In this document: in pieces, positions 29,913-46,099 of the stretch
Position numbering within the stretch: the stretch's first letter is position 1
Layout of the letters: every line of letters starts with the position of its first letter
Sequence record: KT919972.1
Length of the DNA stretch: 64,000 bases
Strand: one strand, 5' to 3'
Program-made: the position numbers and the translations under genes
Notes under the pieces: model-generated
Seen by the model: only the letters and a program-made list of their open reading frames with translations
What the model was told of the DNA's origin: nothing
Databases searched by the model: none

Positions 29913-29940
29913 AAAAAAGGGCGCTATTTGCGCCCTTTTG
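29913..29940 (-). terminator. Rho-independent terminator
   Basis: AAAAAAGGGCGC-TATTT-GCGCCCTTTT (+ strand view). Confidence 0.8.
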
Positions 29941-30454
29941 TTTTTTGTTTCTTTGCTTTTCGTTTAGCTCGTCTAAGTTCTTTTCGTTTAGCGATTTTAT
30001 CTGCTCTTCGAACTGCGTCGTAATCAGCAGCACAAGACGCAGCAAACGCATCAGGTTTGAACACGGGCTCTTGACCAACATATCCCAATATAGTACCTTT
30101 AGCTTCGTTATAGGCAACGTGAGATTTGTGTGTGGGGTCAGGGTTGATGTCAACGTGAACTTCAAAGCCTCTAGTACCGCACATTGGCTTAACCATTAGT
30201 GCAGTTTCACCCGCTTTGTATACTTCATTCATCAATCGACTTCTGATACCATCTTTACATGATAAGTATGCAGGTTCAGTCTCAACTGCTTTAAACACTT
30301 GAGCACCTTTACTACCTTCAAGATGAATTATGATCACAGTCGCGTAACTAATCATGTCACTTTTACGCTTACTATCACACCCAACGTATATTGTGCTATT
30401 TGGATGACTGTTATTGATAGCTGTTTCTATCGCTTCCCAATCGAACATTTTCAC
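29924..30454 (-). CDS. RNase H-fold protein, YkuK/DUF458-like
   Basis: IYVGCDS...YATVIIIH...SRLMNEV...EVHVDIN...KP.AFAAS.AAD; basic C-terminal tail. Confidence 0.75.
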   Translation of the reverse strand: MKMFDWEAIETAINNSHPNSTIYVGCDSKRKSDMISYATVIIIHLEGSKGAQVFKAVETEPAYLSCKDGIRSRLMNEVYKAGETALMVKPMCGTRGFEVHVDINPDPTHKSHVAYNEAKGTILGYVGQEPVFKPDAFAASCAADYDAVRRADKIAKRKELRRAKRKAKKQKTKGRK

Positions 30455-30461
30455 CTCTTAC

Positions 30462-30488
30462 AAAAAAGGGCAGCACAATGCCGCCCTT
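30462..30488 (-). terminator. terminator after the DUF2828 gene
   Basis: - strand: AAGGGCGGCA-TTG-TGCTGCCCTTTTTT. Confidence 0.75.
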
Positions 30489-30497
30489 ATCACTTAT

Positions 30498-31934
30498 TTA
30501 AAAACTGTAGCGTTCGACGCCTACAGTTTTCATCATGATCTTGATTGGCTCAAGCTCACCACCCAACAGTGAAGTCAAGATAGATGGGCTACAACCAGAT
30601 ACCAGTGCAGTACCCGCTTCACCAGCTTTAACCGGAACGTTGCCAAGACGACCACGAATGTTCCAGAAGACCAGTTGTGGCATTTCATAACCAGCACGTG
30701 CGTACTTGGCTTTGATTGCATCGAAGTTCGCAGGTTCACCGCGACCGTACCAACCACCACCAGTGTTTGCTTGATCGAATTCCATGTCACTCATGATAAG
30801 CAACTTGGTTGGCATATCTTCTTGTGAAAGATTTGCACGCTTCGCACGCTCTAGCAGAACATCAAAGCACTTACCGATGTTCGTACTCATGTCTTCGCCT
30901 GAACGATTCATGTTATCAAGACGCTCTTTCAATGAGCTACCGCGCAACTGGTGGAAGTGCGGGTCGCTTGAGAACGAAATGAATTGATCTTTGAAGATGC
31001 CTTCATTGCGTTCAGCAACATAAATCCCAAGAGACATTGCAACTTGCTTACAAGTCACACCTGAATGGTCTGTACCTGCGTTGATTGGCGTGCTCATAGA
31101 GCCAGACACGTCAACAACAGGGATGATGCGTTCATCAGAACCTTCCATGTAGTTTGGCAGAGCTTTCCATTGCTCGTTCGCTACAGACGCATTACCGTGA
31201 CTAACGCTCTTAACGACATCGTATGGGAACAATGCGCCAGCGTTGATCTTCGCTTCACCTTTTTGAAGTGACTCGATGTAGCTTGTGTAACGAGCTGAAG
31301 CGTTACGACCGAATGCTTGTTGATAACGAGCAGACGCTACAGAAGGCAACTTACCGAAGTCGATTGCATCCCATTTTTGCGCACACATCTTCTGCTCAAC
31401 AGTGTCAGACAGAAGCGACAGAATCTTACGCCACTGCTTCGCAGTCACGCCAAGAGACTTGATTGTGCGCTTGAACACATGACCGTTTTTGCTGTTTTCA
31501 CGTGGGAACCACTTCGCAGCAAGACCATTCTTGTCATTGACAATTGCGTTCGACCACATTGTAATCGCATCTTTTTCAAGACGTGTACCGAAAGCAGAAA
31601 TCAAGTCATCGTAACGACCTAGTTCTGGAATTTTCGACATTACAGCACGAGCTACGTCAGGCTGTTCATTACAAAGTTTAGTGAATAGAGTACGGAAAGT
31701 ACCACGTTCACCCGCACCACCTCGAACATCACGAGACCACAAAAGAATGCGAGTCGCTAGTTCTGGGTTTTCTGCAAACGCACGACCGAACAGTGTTTTA
31801 GACTGATCGTTGCCACGCATAGCAGCAATACCGAAGAACAAGTTTAGACACTCGTTACCTGAAGTGCTGTGAGTAACTGCACCGTTTGCTGTGCGTGAAT
31901 CGTTTGTTTGCATTGCGTTCATAAATACTGACAT
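30498..31934 (-). CDS. DUF2828 family helical-domain + vWA protein (Ro60/TROVE-like architecture)
   Basis: RDVRGGAGER, GRYDDL, AAKWFPRE in the helical part; vWA MIDAS DVSGSM, LLIMSDMEFD, LVFWN. Confidence 0.88.
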   Translation of the reverse strand: MSVFMNAMQTNDSRTANGAVTHSTSGNECLNLFFGIAAMRGNDQSKTLFGRAFAENPELATRILLWSRDVRGGAGERGTFRTLFTKLCNEQPDVARAVMSKIPELGRYDDLISAFGTRLEKDAITMWSNAIVNDKNGLAAKWFPRENSKNGHVFKRTIKSLGVTAKQWRKILSLLSDTVEQKMCAQKWDAIDFGKLPSVASARYQQAFGRNASARYTSYIESLQKGEAKINAGALFPYDVVKSVSHGNASVANEQWKALPNYMEGSDERIIPVVDVSGSMSTPINAGTDHSGVTCKQVAMSLGIYVAERNEGIFKDQFISFSSDPHFHQLRGSSLKERLDNMNRSGEDMSTNIGKCFDVLLERAKRANLSQEDMPTKLLIMSDMEFDQANTGGGWYGRGEPANFDAIKAKYARAGYEMPQLVFWNIRGRLGNVPVKAGEAGTALVSGCSPSILTSLLGGELEPIKIMMKTVGVERYSF

Positions 31935-31970
31935 TGTTCATTTCCTCATAATTAATTGCTGTAAAATGTC
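31930..31970 (-). promoter_or_regulatory. 5'-leader hairpin covering the DUF2828 start codon
   Basis: GACATT-TTACAGCAA-TTAATTATGAGGAAATGAAC-AATGTC; the 3' strand contains the ATG; T4-type early promoter GTTTACA..TATAAT (-10 at 31983-31988) just upstream. Confidence 0.6.
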
Positions 31971-32024
31971 TTTGATGAAGTGATTATACGCGAATTTTAA
32001 TGCATGTAAACACTTTTTTTTAAT

Positions 32025-36789: not shown

Positions 36790-36814
36790 AAAAAAACCTG
36801 CTCAAGGCAGGTTT
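36790..36814 (-). terminator. terminator ending the tRNA/ncRNA transcript
   Basis: - strand: AAACCTGC-CTTGA-GCAGGTTTTTTT. Confidence 0.8.
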
Positions 36815-36829
36815 AGATGTGCAATACAC

Positions 36830-37073
36830 AGACATTCGAGAAGTGTTTTATCGTCTTTCCTTAAATCTCATTTGACTATAACGATGTTTCTCATCGGAAA
36901 AATACCCATGATTCGGCATGAGTCCTATTTCGTTTGACAGTACGAACACCGTCTTAATGGTCATTTCCTACCATGAGAATGCGTCAGGCTCACGTCATCA
37001 CTGAGAAAGCAGCTAGTGCGCCTCATTACTATTAAAGTTTGCTTTGATTTGTAATGATTGCTGTACAATGTCT
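36830..37073 (-). ncRNA. structured ncRNA A (244 nt, helix+ACAGCAA family)
   Basis: ends pair (AGACATT/AATGTCT); ACAGCAA follows the 5' strand; 39-nt 3' block shared with ncRNA B. Confidence 0.65.
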
Positions 37074-39091: not shown

Positions 39092-39319
39092 AGACAATAC
39101 CGAAGTGTTTTTTCGTCTTTTGCATAAATCGGAGTTGACTAGCTTATTGTTTCTCAACAAGCAAATATCGTCTGTTTCAGCGACGCGCCTATCTGACTAT
39201 TTCTAGACAGAGAGAATCTTTCCTTTCAAGCTGCGCCTAAGCAAGCTCAGGTTAAAATCAGCCCAGGTTAAGATCATCACTTCTTTTAAGTAATTTCAAT
39301 TGTTTGCTGTATATTGTCT
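39092..39319 (-). ncRNA. structured ncRNA B (228 nt, helix+ACAGCAA family)
   Basis: ends pair (AGACAATA/TATTGTCT); ACAGCAA follows the 5' strand; 3' block shared with ncRNA A. Confidence 0.65.
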
Positions 39320-40254: not shown

Positions 40255-40260
40255 GTAACT

Positions 40261-40375
40261 GAGTGTTATTACTAGCGTCGTCCAGACCAGTGATACCGAC
40301 ACTGAAGAGGAATCGAACCTCGAACTTTTCTTTTCATCAGAAGAATATTAGTAAATTGTTTGCTGAAAACACTCT
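40261..40375 (-). ncRNA. circularly permuted tRNA-mimic (YrlA-like) RNA
   Basis: closing GAGTGTT/AACACTC + TCAGCAA; then T arm GAGG-TTCGATT-CCTC, looped acceptor-like stem CAGTG/CACTG, GG-containing D-like hairpin. Confidence 0.65.
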
Positions 40376-40785: not shown

Positions 40786-40843
40786 AGTAATCCTTTTTGC
40801 TTTTTCCAAATAAAAGTTTTGTATTGTTTGCTGTAAGATTACT
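40786..40843 (-). ncRNA. minimal helix+ACAGCAA RNA (58 nt)
   Basis: AGTAATCT/GGATTACT closing helix, TACAGCAA, internal CTTTT-ATTTGGA-AAAAG hairpin. Confidence 0.55.
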
Positions 40844-41258: not shown

Positions 41259-41345
41259 AGCTTGCGTTCTTTGGTCTGTTTATCGCTGTCTGAACTGAGT
41301 TCGTCGAGTGATCAATAGATTAAGTTGAATTGCAGTATGCAAGCT
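41259..41345 (-). ncRNA. small helix+ACTGCAA RNA (87 nt)
   Basis: AGCTTGC/GCAAGCT closing helix followed by AT-ACTGCAA. Confidence 0.55.
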
Positions 41346-43327: not shown

Positions 43328-43443
43328 TGGTAGTCGGGGCTGGATTCGAACCAGCGACCACGTGCTTAACAGGCAATTGAAGGAGTGCTGGAGCGATACT
43401 TGTCAGTATCATTCTTCGTGCTCTACCACTGAGCTACCCGACT
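43328..43443 (-). ncRNA. tRNA-Asn(GTT) body with a 41-nt structured insertion at position 28/29
   Basis: removing 43376-43416 gives a regular 75-nt cloverleaf with CGTGC-CTGTTAA-GCACG and CCA. Confidence 0.8.
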
Positions 43444-45330: not shown

Positions 45331-45455
45331 TGGAGGAGAGTACGGGATTTGAACCACGTGACAAAAAGATTTACCTAGTTATTAAGGTTTGCAGCATGAA
45401 TGCTTGTCAGTATTCTTTAACATTCTTTTGCTCTACCAGACTGAGCTAACTCTCC
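45331..45455 (-). ncRNA. tRNA body with the anticodon loop replaced by a ~54-nt module
   Basis: GGAGAGT acceptor, D arm, AAAGA/TCTTT stem enclosing GAATACT-GACA-AGCATTC-ATGCTGCAAA, T arm, TCCA. Confidence 0.7.
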
Positions 45456-45461
45456 AGAATT

Positions 45462-45580
45462 TGAAGGTGAAGTGCAGGACTCGAACCTGCGACCTCCGGC
45501 GTGCATGTGAATGCAGAATGAAATCTTATCAGACTTCGTTTTTTTTGGCCGGCATTCTAACCAACTGAACTAACTTCACC
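45462..45580 (-). ncRNA. Asp-like tRNA body with the anticodon loop replaced by a ~47-nt module
   Basis: D arm GTTC-AGTTGGTTA-GAAT, CCGGC/GCCGG stem enclosing GAAGTCT-GATA-AGATTTC-ATTCTGCAT; no CCA. Confidence 0.7.
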
Positions 45581-45594
45581 AATGTAAAAACATA

Positions 45595-45719
45595 TTGAGC
45601 AGGGTGCAGGATTCGAACCTGCGTCACGATCTTGGAAATGATATGCTAAATTGATTGCAGAATACAAACTTAACAGCTTGCGTTTATGCTACGTGTGCTA
45701 GCCACTACACCAACCCTGC
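45595..45719 (-). ncRNA. Gly-like tRNA body with a 49-nt insertion at position 28/29
   Basis: GCAGGGT acceptor, U73, residual loop ATTTCCAA; insert holds a hairpin + ATTCTGCAA; 17-bp extended acceptor duplex. Confidence 0.75.
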
Positions 45720-45976: not shown

Positions 45977-46099
45977 TGGTCGAGTGTAACGGAATCGAAC
46001 CGTTCCCACGATCTCCCTATGATATGCGTAAATTGGTTGCTGAATATAATCATGTCTGATTACAGTATGCTACGTGTGCTGCCACTACACCAACACTCG
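45977..46099 (-). ncRNA. Pro-like tRNA body (AGG) with a 49-nt insertion at position 28/29
   Basis: C1-G72, A73, CCA; loop AT-AGG-GA; insert holds a hairpin + ATTCAGCAA; 21-bp extended acceptor duplex. Confidence 0.75.

What the first reader, a model, noticed from the sequence alone, without database searches (positions are those of the whole stretch)
31930..31970. The DUF2828 gene's own start codon lies inside a copy of the RNA module (autoregulation signature)
Seen: an early promoter (GTTTACA..TATAAT) gives a leader of about 40 nt reading GACATT-TT-ACAGCAA-TTAATTATGAGGAAATGAAC-AATGTC. GACATT pairs with AATGTC, which contains the ATG, and the SD (GAGG) is in the loop. The 5' part AGACATTTTACAGCAAT differs at one base from the 5' end of ncRNA A (AGACATTGTACAGCAAT). 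Established: RNA-binding proteins often repress their own translation through a mimic of their target (ribosomal proteins, T4 gp32). Inference: this is the best sequence-level link between the protein and the motif; free protein would clamp the weak 6-bp helix and stop its own synthesis when partner RNAs are saturated.
Basis: partly seen in the sequence, partly recalled or inferred. Interest (0 to 1): 0.82.

Follow-up and report, generated by a model that had tools for sequence, protein, structure and literature searches.

The report
Y-RNA mimic at a phage gene's start
A Vibrio phage gene for a Ro60-like RNA-binding protein starts inside a small copy of the RNA hairpin carried by the phage's own partner RNAs, so the protein probably shuts off its own translation once those RNAs are saturated.

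Summary
The window is Vibrio phage phi-Grn1, a KVP40-like phage. On the minus strand, a near-consensus early promoter gives a leader of about 42 nt. In it, AGACAUU-UUA-CAGCAA sits 5' of the SD (GAGG), and the complementary AAUGUC contains the AUG of the DUF2828/DUF7788 gene.

The helix is weak and no more stable than shuffled sequence. The support is comparative:
- The predicted protein fold matches Ro60/Rsr.
- An RNA module (AGA-N7-CAGCAA ... UCU-G, closed by a covarying stem) lies next to DUF2828 genes in over 100 phage and metagenome loci: 164 copies on the gene strand, 1 opposite.
- Five such RNAs lie in this phage's tRNA cluster.
- In KVP40-like phages, two Aeromonas phage groups, a jumbo-phage clade and two MAG contigs, one module sits at the ribosome-binding site of the DUF2828 gene itself.
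- Across 20 such leaders the stem covaries and CAGCA stays fixed.

Translational autorepression by target mimicry is the best reading (about 0.55). It is untested. Many lineages lack the leader copy, and modules also abut other genes' SDs. I found no paper describing this RNA family or the operator.

The parts
32006..32011 (-). -35 element GTTTAC of a T4-type early promoter
   Evidence: Sequence. The promoter scan matches 11 of 12. It is conserved in 7 KVP40-like lineages.
31983..31988 (-). -10 element TATAAT. The predicted transcription start is about 31976, some 5 nt before the module.
   Evidence: The start site is inferred from spacing, not mapped.
31965..31971 (-). 5' strand of the module stem, AGACAUU. 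It begins exactly 10 nt before CAGCA, as in every module.
   Evidence: It is identical to the 5' strand of the RNA at 37073-36830.
31956..31964 (-). Linker UUA plus the invariant single-stranded core CAGCAA
   Evidence: ACAGCA is invariant in 8 orthologous leaders. C-GCA is invariant in 46 modules of other phages.
31944..31947 (-). Shine-Dalgarno GAGG, 9 nt before the AUG, inside the 20-nt loop of the module
31928..31935 (-). 3' strand AAUGUCA plus the invariant following G. It contains the start codon (31934-31932), the Ser codon UCA and the first base of codon 3.
   Evidence: UCA is kept in all GACAUU-type leaders. D479 uses AGC and has its stem elsewhere.
30498..31934 (-). DUF2828/DUF7788 gene (478 aa) with a Ro60-like fold: helical ring plus vWA domain
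   Evidence: Pfam. phrog_850 'RNA-binding protein'. AF2 model with pLDDT 83. The top 12 Foldseek PDB hits are all Ro60/Rsr/TROVE, E 2e-9 to 3e-6.
30466..30488 (-). Intrinsic terminator just after the stop codon, which makes the gene a monocistronic unit
36830..37073 (-). Module RNA 'A' (about 244 nt), stem AGACAUU/AAUGUCU. It follows tRNA-Ser and is followed by a terminator-like hairpin.
   Evidence: It is conserved in KVP40 and nt-1.
39092..39319 (-). Module RNA (about 228 nt), stem AGACAAUAU/GUAUUGUCU
40260..40375 (-). Module RNA (about 116 nt). Its loop holds a T-arm-like hairpin (GAGGUUCGAUUCCUC) followed by a D-arm-like hairpin.
   Evidence: The tRNA likeness was judged by eye only.
40786..40843 (-). 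Small module RNA (58 nt), stem AGUAAUCUU/AGGAUUACU. It is the best-scoring module in the window.
   Evidence: The stem covaries in KVP40 (AGCAAUC/GAUUGCU).
41259..41345 (-). Module RNA of the CUGCAA variant, stem AGCUUGC/GCAAGCU

Best explanation
The leader of the DUF2828 mRNA is a minimal mimic of the terminal stem and CAGCAA motif of the phage's own Y-RNA-like partner RNAs. It most likely acts as a translational operator.

Shown:
- An early promoter is placed so that the mRNA should begin about 5 nt before the module.
- The module's loop holds the SD, and its 3' strand holds the AUG.
- The protein has a Ro60-like fold.
- Module RNAs are encoded beside DUF2828 genes across many phage lineages.

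Inferred:
- The protein binds the stem base (AGA/UCU-G) and the single-stranded CAGCAA.
- Early in infection it is made freely and loads onto the five or more module RNAs of the tRNA cluster.
- Once those are saturated, free protein binds its own leader, clamps the weak 6-7-bp stem and covers the SD and AUG. The 30S subunit then cannot bind.
- The result would match protein dosage to RNA dosage.

In other phages the stem ends 12-18 nt before the AUG and abuts the SD, which would give the same steric block.
For: 1. Ro60 fold. The top 12 PDB structural matches are all Ro60/Rsr/TROVE over the full length, with TM 0.5-0.62. A weak TROVE sequence match also appears (E 0.0018).
2. Protein-RNA link.
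   - AAGA-N7-CAGCAA occurs about 65 times in 173 loci, always on the gene strand.
   - There are 164 scored modules on the gene strand against 1 opposite in 102 IMG/VR loci.
   - The figures are 45 against 0 in GTDB contigs.
   - Neighbouring genes differ between lineages, so DUF2828 is the only constant partner.
3. The leader copy is conserved.
   - The 5' strand and ACAGCA are invariant in 8 KVP40-like lineages, while the rest of the loop varies except for the SD.
   - 30 phage records keep the promoter and leader.
4. Stem covariation across 20 leaders: 93.6% paired against 66.3% in shuffles (0 of 500 reach it). There are 30 compensatory cells against 9.9 expected, and slid controls reach 26-44%.
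5. Position. In 14 of 14 loci from the Aeromonas and jumbo-phage clades, the gene-proximal module ends 12-21 nt before the ATG and abuts the SD. L175 and L178 do the same, at -15 and -17.
6. All 8 modules of 45 nt or less, among 145 distinct IMG/VR modules, are DUF2828 leaders. This size class looks like a cis element, not a separate RNA gene.
7. An independently trained model ranks this leader 5th in the window, above RNA 'A' itself.
8. Codon use fits. Ser2 is UCA and codon 3 starts with G wherever the stem uses AUGUCA-G. D479 uses AGC and has its stem (AGAAAUU/GAUUUCU) before the AUG.
Against: - No binding or expression data exist. The protein-RNA contact rests only on fold and gene neighbourhood.
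- The leader hairpin has no thermodynamic signal.
- Within the KVP40-like group the stem is only conserved, not covarying. Its 3' strand is also constrained by coding.
- Most DUF2828 lineages carry the module downstream of the gene and have no leader copy. This holds for 68 of 102 loci, and for Ci1/L054.
- CZ01 and D482 lost the leader to a homing-endonuclease insertion, so the element is dispensable.
- Modules also abut the SD of other small ORFs, so tight spacing may partly be genome packing.
- A covariance model built from collapsed modules had no power and did not list the leader.
- The A7 alignment is hand-anchored, and its six GACAUU-type rows are not independent.
Confidence: 0.55

Rival explanations
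1. The same protein binds the leader module, but not to repress. The leader copy would serve as a cis loading or assembly site for newly made protein, or as a 5' cap-like structure that protects or activates the mRNA.
For: - The same association and conservation evidence applies.
- In L096, L097 and L104 the 'leader' is a full-size RNA with a tRNA-like domain, not a minimal mimic.
- The module sits at the very 5' end of the predicted transcript, a position typical of 5' stabilisers.
Against: In KVP40-like phages the AUG is inside the stem and the SD is inside the loop. Stable binding there should hinder initiation, not help it. Minimal 32-36-nt copies occur only at the RBS.
Confidence: 0.17
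2. The module is read by another factor, such as a host or phage endoribonuclease that processes the tRNA-cluster transcripts. The leader copy would then be a cleavage or decay signal, and DUF2828 would be only a neighbour.
For: - Modules are arranged in tandem with short GUUUAA-type linkers and sit among tRNAs, which are processed.
- An RNaseH_like (DUF458) gene follows DUF2828 in KVP40-like phages.
Against: - The RNaseH_like neighbour is absent from the other lineages that carry modules.
- DUF2828 is the only gene always next to modules, on the same strand.
- The Ro60 fold predicts binding to a terminal stem of just this kind.
Confidence: 0.1
3. The leader copy has no function of its own. 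It would be a remnant of a duplicated 5' end of RNA 'A', or the last RNA gene of an upstream array packed tightly against the ORF. The pairing with AAUGUC would be an accident of the Met-Ser start.
For: - The 5' part matches RNA 'A' at 16 of 17 bases.
- Downstream modules start just as tightly, 8-30 nt after stop codons.
- Modules abut other ORFs too.
- The hairpin has no thermodynamic signal.
- Several lineages lack the element.
Against: - The motif and 5' strand are invariant while neighbouring loop bases drift.
- D479 shows compensatory relocation of the stem.
- Five unrelated groups have the same arrangement, with stem covariation.
- In this phage the copy has its own promoter 5 kb from the RNA cluster and contains the SD and AUG, so it is not a packed RNA gene.
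Confidence: 0.1

Closest known systems
Ro60/Rsr with Y RNAs, including the bacterial and phage YrlA tRNA mimics (Chen et al. 2014, PMC4201824; Thermus phage phiLo Ro60, PMC12135203)
   Same: - The predicted structure is a ring of helical repeats plus a vWA domain.
- The partner RNAs are encoded next to the gene on the same strand.
- The RNA ends pair into a terminal stem with a conserved protein-facing element.
- Some partners enclose a permuted tRNA-like domain, with the T arm before the D arm, as described for YrlA.
   Different: - Pfam assigns DUF2828 and DUF7788, not TROVE.
- The conserved RNA element is AGA-N7-CAGCAA...UCU-G, not the Ro-binding helix.
- Rfam YrlA reaches only 27.8-32 bits against a gathering score of 69, and only over the tRNA-like part.
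- In the papers I searched, no leader copy or autoregulation is reported for Ro60.
Autogenous translational control by target mimicry: E. coli thrS operator (tRNA-Thr mimic), ribosomal proteins S8/L1/S15/L20, and T4 gp32, gp43 and RegA (named from established knowledge, not tested here)
   Same: An RNA-binding protein's own RBS carries a small copy of its main RNA ligand. Excess free protein would compete with the ribosome.
   Different: Here the repression is only inferred. The ligand is a Y-RNA-like terminal stem, not rRNA or tRNA. The mimic may have arisen by copying the end of a partner RNA (16 of 17 identity).
MS2/R17 coat protein and the replicase operator hairpin (established knowledge)
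   Same: A short, weak hairpin holding the start codon (and here the SD as well) is clamped by a phage protein to block initiation.
   Different: The MS2 operator is not a mimic of a separate partner RNA. Here the loop is 29 nt and the conserved element is single-stranded CAGCAA beside the stem.

Membership tests
Ro60/TROVE proteins | Match to the TROVE sequence family (Pfam) | tested here: not met
   Pfam gives DUF7788 (2e-46) and DUF2828 (2.7e-29), with no TROVE hit at E up to 1. A profile search against PDB sequences reaches TROVE chains only at E 0.0018, over the MIDAS region.
Ro60/TROVE proteins | Fold: ring of alpha-helical repeats followed by a vWA/MIDAS domain | tested here: met
   AF2 model with pLDDT 83 and pTM 0.81. 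The top 12 Foldseek hits are Ro60/Rsr/TROVE over the full length, E 2e-9 to 3e-6. The next hits match the vWA domain only, at E above 4e-3.
Ro60/TROVE proteins | Binds a noncoding RNA encoded nearby on the same strand | tested here: inconclusive
   Adjacency and strand are met: 164 against 1 and 45 against 0. Binding itself cannot be tested with these tools.
Y RNA / YrlA (Rfam RF02553) | Score at or above the family's gathering threshold | tested here: not met
   The best hits are 32 bits (window 45430-45494) and 27.8 bits (L104 2400-2467), against a gathering score of 69. No Rfam family covers the leader or the module RNAs.
Y RNA / YrlA (Rfam RF02553) | Terminal stem formed by the 5' and 3' ends, enclosing a tRNA-like domain with the T arm before the D arm | tested here: inconclusive
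   Terminal stems are predicted and covary. T-arm and D-arm hairpins were seen by eye in window 40375-40260 and in L045, L074, L099 and L101. No model-based test reached significance.
Autogenous translational operator (target mimic) | The element overlaps the gene's own ribosome-binding site | tested here: met
   The SD is in the loop and the AUG is in the 3' strand. In other lineages the stem abuts the SD, 12-21 nt before the ATG.
Autogenous translational operator (target mimic) | The element resembles the protein's main RNA ligand | tested here: met
   It matches RNA 'A' at 16 of 17 bases. It has the same AGA-N7-CAGCA geometry. It ranks 5th in the window under a model trained on other phages. 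That the module RNAs are the ligand is itself inferred.
Autogenous translational operator (target mimic) | Conserved in orthologues, with compensatory changes in the stem | tested here: met
   Caveats: the alignment is hand-anchored and collapsed, there is no covariation inside the KVP40-like group, and several lineages lack the element.
Autogenous translational operator (target mimic) | The protein binds the element and lowers its own translation | not testable with these tools
   This needs binding assays, reporter fusions and toeprinting.

The most novel reading that the evidence does not exclude
DUF2828/DUF7788 proteins and the AGA-N7-CAGCAA stem RNAs may form a second, so far undescribed Ro60/Y-RNA-type ribonucleoprotein.
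- It would be spread across phages of very different hosts: Vibrio T4-like phages, Aeromonas phages, jumbo phages, and contigs binned with Lachnospiraceae, Chloroflexota, CPR and DPANN genomes.
- Some of its RNAs are tRNA mimics.
- In several lineages a minimal mimic at the protein's own start site would set the dosage.
- Because it sits in phage tRNA clusters, it may act in tRNA or RNA quality control, or in countering host RNA-targeting defences.
Probability: 0.5. Interest if true: 0.85.

Novelty: new variant of a known kind. Interest (0 to 1): 0.7.

Why it matters
Ro60 and its Y RNAs are conserved from bacteria to humans, yet their roles in bacteria and phages are still poorly understood. 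This locus offers three things.

- A compact, genetically tractable relative. The protein has a Ro60 fold that sequence families miss, and its RNA partners are recognisable by a simple fixed-geometry motif.
- A built-in binding-site mimic of about 43 nt at the protein's own RBS. That gives an immediate minimal substrate for binding, structural and reporter assays.
- A way to annotate RNA genes now labelled as gaps or pseudo-tRNAs in many phage tRNA clusters.

If confirmed, it would be the first case I could find in the searched literature of a Ro60-type protein regulating itself through a Y-RNA mimic.

Tried and rejected
- **Thermodynamics.** The leader hairpin is no more stable than shuffles. 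RNA 'A' gives z = 0.05. Folding energy is uninformative here.
- **Generic stem search.** A 6-bp partner within 260 nt is found for over half of CAGCA sites on either strand. An AGA-anchored version still gives about 4.5 chance hits per strand. Neither is specific enough.
- **Covariance model R1.** It was built from 46 loop-collapsed modules. Every window hit had E above 1, bona fide RNAs were only partly aligned, and the leader was not listed. The model lacks power, so I replaced it with my own PWM-plus-helix scan using free loop length.
- **MAFFT on full-length modules.** It misplaced the 3' strands of short-loop leaders, so I used collapsed, anchored alignments instead.
- **RNAalifold within KVP40-like leaders.** It recovers the stem but shows no covariation.
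- **Rfam.** No family matches at the leader or the module RNAs. YrlA is sub-threshold only.
- **Does the leader stem track the stem of a particular partner RNA?** Not in D479.
- **Is the DUF458/RNaseH_like neighbour the true partner?** No. It is present only in KVP40-like phages.
- **Sequence libraries.** NCBIfam and PADLOC give no hits. A single-sequence PDB search finds only designed repeat proteins.
- **Literature.** No paper links DUF2828 to an RNA motif or to autoregulation.
- **Structure input.** I reran it with permitted rows.

Full report
**Identity of the window.** The window is bases 1-64000 of Vibrio phage phi-Grn1 (KT919972.1). This is a KVP40-like T4-type phage of genus Schizotequatrovirus. 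The finding concerns the minus strand.

**The observation.**
- The ORF 30498-31934 encodes a 478-aa protein. It matches Pfam DUF7788 (2e-46) and DUF2828 (2.7e-29), and PHROG 850 'RNA-binding protein'.
- Upstream lies a near-consensus promoter. GTTTAC is at 32011-32006 and TATAAT at 31988-31983, 11 of 12 in the scan.
- The predicted start is near 31976, giving a leader of about 42 nt.
- An intrinsic terminator (30488-30466) follows the stop codon, so the gene is its own transcription unit.
- The leader reads AUCAA-AGACAUU-UUA-CAGCAA-UUAAUUAU-GAGG-AAAUGAAC-AAUGUCA-G. GACAUU (31970-31965) is the exact complement of AAUGUC (31935-31930). That segment holds the AUG (31934-31932). The SD GAGG (31947-31944) lies in the loop.
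- The 17-mer AGACATTTTACAGCAAT differs at one base from 37073-37057.

**Is it more than chance?**
- Not by folding energy. The hairpin is -4.2 kcal/mol, no better than shuffled sequence.
- Short complementary partners are common.
- The signal lies in the motif and in comparison with other genomes.

**The module.**
- CAGCAANCAAT-type motifs cluster on the minus strand of the tRNA region.
- Comparison with other phages gave a fixed geometry. The stem starts with AGA exactly 10 nt before CAGCA(A). The 3' strand ends in UCU and is followed by an invariant G. The inner stem positions vary.
- AGA-N7-CAGCA occurs 7 times in the window against 1.9 expected.
- Five module RNAs lie in the tRNA cluster: 37073-36830, 39319-39092, 40375-40260, 40843-40786 and 41345-41259.
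- All five are conserved in KVP40 and nt-1, with compensatory changes such as AGUAAUC/GAUUACU to AGCAAUC/GAUUGCU.

**The protein.**
- An AlphaFold2 model built on a 43-sequence alignment has pLDDT 83 and pTM 0.81.
- Its 12 best PDB matches are all Ro60/Rsr/TROVE structures over the full length. They include Deinococcus Rsr, Xenopus and human Ro60 and Thermus phage phiLo Ro60. E-values run from 2e-9 to 3e-6 and TM-scores from 0.5 to 0.62.
- The next matches cover the vWA domain only.
- Sequence methods barely see the relationship.
- Ro60 proteins bind Y RNAs whose ends pair into a stem, and bacterial and phage YrlA RNAs enclose a tRNA-like domain (PMC4201824). Several module RNAs here and elsewhere enclose a T-arm followed by a D-arm.
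- Rfam's YrlA model reaches only 28-32 bits against a threshold of 69.

**Link between protein and module.** I fetched 80 + 80 IMG/VR loci and 80 GTDB contigs that encode relatives of the protein.
- AAGA-N7-CAGCAA occurs about 65 times in the loci held, always on the gene's strand.
- I trained a PWM-plus-helix score on 46 modules from non-KVP40 phages. It finds 164 modules on the gene strand and 1 on the other strand in 102 distinct IMG/VR loci.
- The same score finds 45 against 0 in the GTDB contigs. These include contigs binned with Lachnospiraceae, Chloroflexota, Lentisphaeria, a CPR bacterium and a Pacearchaeote.
- Neighbouring genes differ from lineage to lineage (RNaseH_like, Band_7, Endonuclease_NS or none). 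DUF2828 is therefore the constant partner.
- This link is much stronger than the leader copy alone.

**The leader copy across phages.**
- *KVP40-like lineages.* In phi-Grn1/VH7D, KVP40, nt-1, K566/D525, 1.081.O and F86, the 5' strand and ACAGCA are invariant. The loop drifts except at the SD. Thirty phage records keep the promoter and leader.
- *D479.* The gene is 69.5% identical in DNA over the matched stretch. This phage has a different but complementary stem, AGAAAUU/GAUUUCU, now between the SD and the AUG. It still has AUACAGCA. Its Ser2 codon is AGC, whereas every AUGUCA-type leader uses UCA.
- *Aeromonas phages.* 4_4572/LAh_8 and APT65 are unrelated to KVP40. They carry arrays of at least four tandem modules upstream of the gene, and the last one ends at the SD.
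- *Jumbo-phage clade.* The gene-proximal module is either a 32-36-nt minimal hairpin or a full RNA with a tRNA-like domain. In every case it ends 12-18 nt before the ATG and abuts the SD.
- *MAG contigs.* Two contigs (L175, L178) show the same arrangement.
- *Covariation.* On a collapsed, anchor-defined alignment of 20 leaders, the 7-bp stem is 93.6% paired against 66.3% in shuffles (0 of 500 reach it). Four pairs change on both sides. There are 30 compensatory cells against 9.9 expected, and sliding one strand drops pairing to 26-44%.
- *Size class.* Among 145 distinct IMG/VR modules, all 8 that are 45 nt or shorter are DUF2828 leaders.
- *Independent score.* The model trained without KVP40-like sequences gives these window scores:

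| Position | Score |
|---|---|
| 40843 | 25.7 |
| 40375 | 22.9 |
| 41345 | 18.4 |
| 39319 | 15.1 |
| leader | 14.1 |
| RNA 'A' (37073) | 13.0 |

  Shuffled windows give 0.11 hits at 14.1 or above.

**Interpretation.** The copy in this phage has its own promoter, lies 5 kb from the RNA cluster, and contains the SD and AUG. It cannot be a separate RNA gene, so it is a cis element of the mRNA. If the Ro60-like protein binds module stems, it will also bind its own RBS, and repression is the simplest outcome. Binding is supported by fold and neighbourhood but not shown. I put translational autorepression by target mimicry at about 0.55.

**Limits and rivals.**
- Most DUF2828 lineages place the module just after the gene and have no leader copy. 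This holds for 68 of 102 loci.
- The T4-like Citrobacter phage Ci1 and its relatives lack the leader copy.
- CZ01 and D482 lost the leader to a homing-endonuclease insertion.
- Modules also abut the SD of other small ORFs in APT65, 4_4572 and L101. That could mean a small regulon, or only tight packing.
- The covariation alignment is hand-anchored and its rows are related.
- A covariance model had no power.
- The rivals are a non-repressive cis role for the same protein (0.17), recognition by another factor such as an RNase (0.10), and a functionless remnant (0.10).

**Novelty.** Ro60/Y-RNA systems in phages are known (PMC4201824, PMC7824862, PMC12135203), and so is autoregulation by mimicry. 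I found no paper that links DUF2828 to an RNA motif, describes this RNA family, or reports a Ro60-type protein with a mimic at its own RBS. I rate it a new variant of a known kind.

Noticed in passing
window 43331-43443, 45334-45455, 45466-45579, 45598-45719, 45980-46099 (minus strand): Five tRNA-like genes of 113-122 nt. Rfam tRNA scores the three at 43331-43443, 45334-45455 and 45466-45579 at 48-54 bits; all five are annotated in the record as tRNA or tRNA-OTHER. Each has a long insert after an anticodon-like hairpin, and the insert carries AUU-C(A/U)GCAA(N)CAAUU. A homologous 114-nt pseudo-tRNA lies 600 nt downstream of the DUF2828 gene in Citrobacter phage Ci1 (L014 4344-4457). These may be a second class of partner RNA.
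   Followed up: partly
L008 (CZ01) 564-1176 and L009 (D482) 564-1191: A homing endonuclease gene is inserted on the opposite strand immediately upstream of the DUF2828 gene. It replaces the promoter, the leader and the first codons (MTSLF instead of MSAF). GGAGCUUACAGCA still abuts the AUG, but no stem is present. This is unexplained.
   Followed up: partly
68 of 102 IMG/VR loci, e.g. L033 4430, L038 4432, L063, L125: In AT-rich clades (protein N-termini MKFVDALRQE, MNFLDALQTE and similar), the module RNA lies downstream of the gene instead of upstream. It often starts 8-30 nt after the stop codon. Some of these loci have Bacteroidota-type promoters.
   Followed up: partly
L013 1094-1133; L011 1526-1579; L101 1263-1377: Modules directly abut the SD of other small ORFs: a 57-aa ORF, a 124-aa membrane protein and a 69-aa ORF. 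This may be a small regulon, or simply tight packing.
   Followed up: partly
window 29924-30448 (minus strand): An RNaseH_like (DUF458/YkuK-type) gene follows the DUF2828 terminator in all KVP40-like phages. It is absent from the other lineages examined.
   Followed up: partly
window 31846-31852 (minus strand, inside the coding region): AGUGUCU followed by AAAC could pair with the leader's AGACAUU: 7 bp with one G-U and a 112-nt loop. It resembles the usual 3' strand plus tail. This is probably chance, because it lies in the conserved NECLNLFF coding segment.
   Followed up: no
window about 36790-36815 (minus strand): A terminator-like hairpin, AAACCUGCCUUGAGCAGGUUUUUUU, lies about 15 nt after the 3' strand of RNA 'A'. 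RNA 'A' would then be the last element of the tRNA-cluster transcript.
   Followed up: no
L096, L097, L099, L102, L103, upstream of the gene: A third conserved module RNA type is enclosed by an AGAUUAG/CUAAUCU stem. Its core reads CCUUUC(Y)GGAGGGGAAAG-CAAAAACUCGCCAAAA. These jumbo-phage loci also have tRNA genes just downstream of DUF2828.
   Followed up: no
L185 (contig binned as Pacearchaeota), L184 (Peribacteria), L182/L183 (Chloroflexota), L187-L254 (Lachnospiraceae and other Clostridia): DUF2828 relatives of 32-54% identity lie in very distant hosts or bins. Among them, L182-L185 and about 15 of the Clostridia contigs carry scored same-strand CAGCAA modules. The Clostridia version reads AAGACGG-UUA-CAGCAA. 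These contigs may be phage or prophage DNA.
   Followed up: partly
L011 3928-4818; L091 3041-3829: A Band_7/SPFH-domain gene follows DUF2828 in two unrelated lineages.
   Followed up: no
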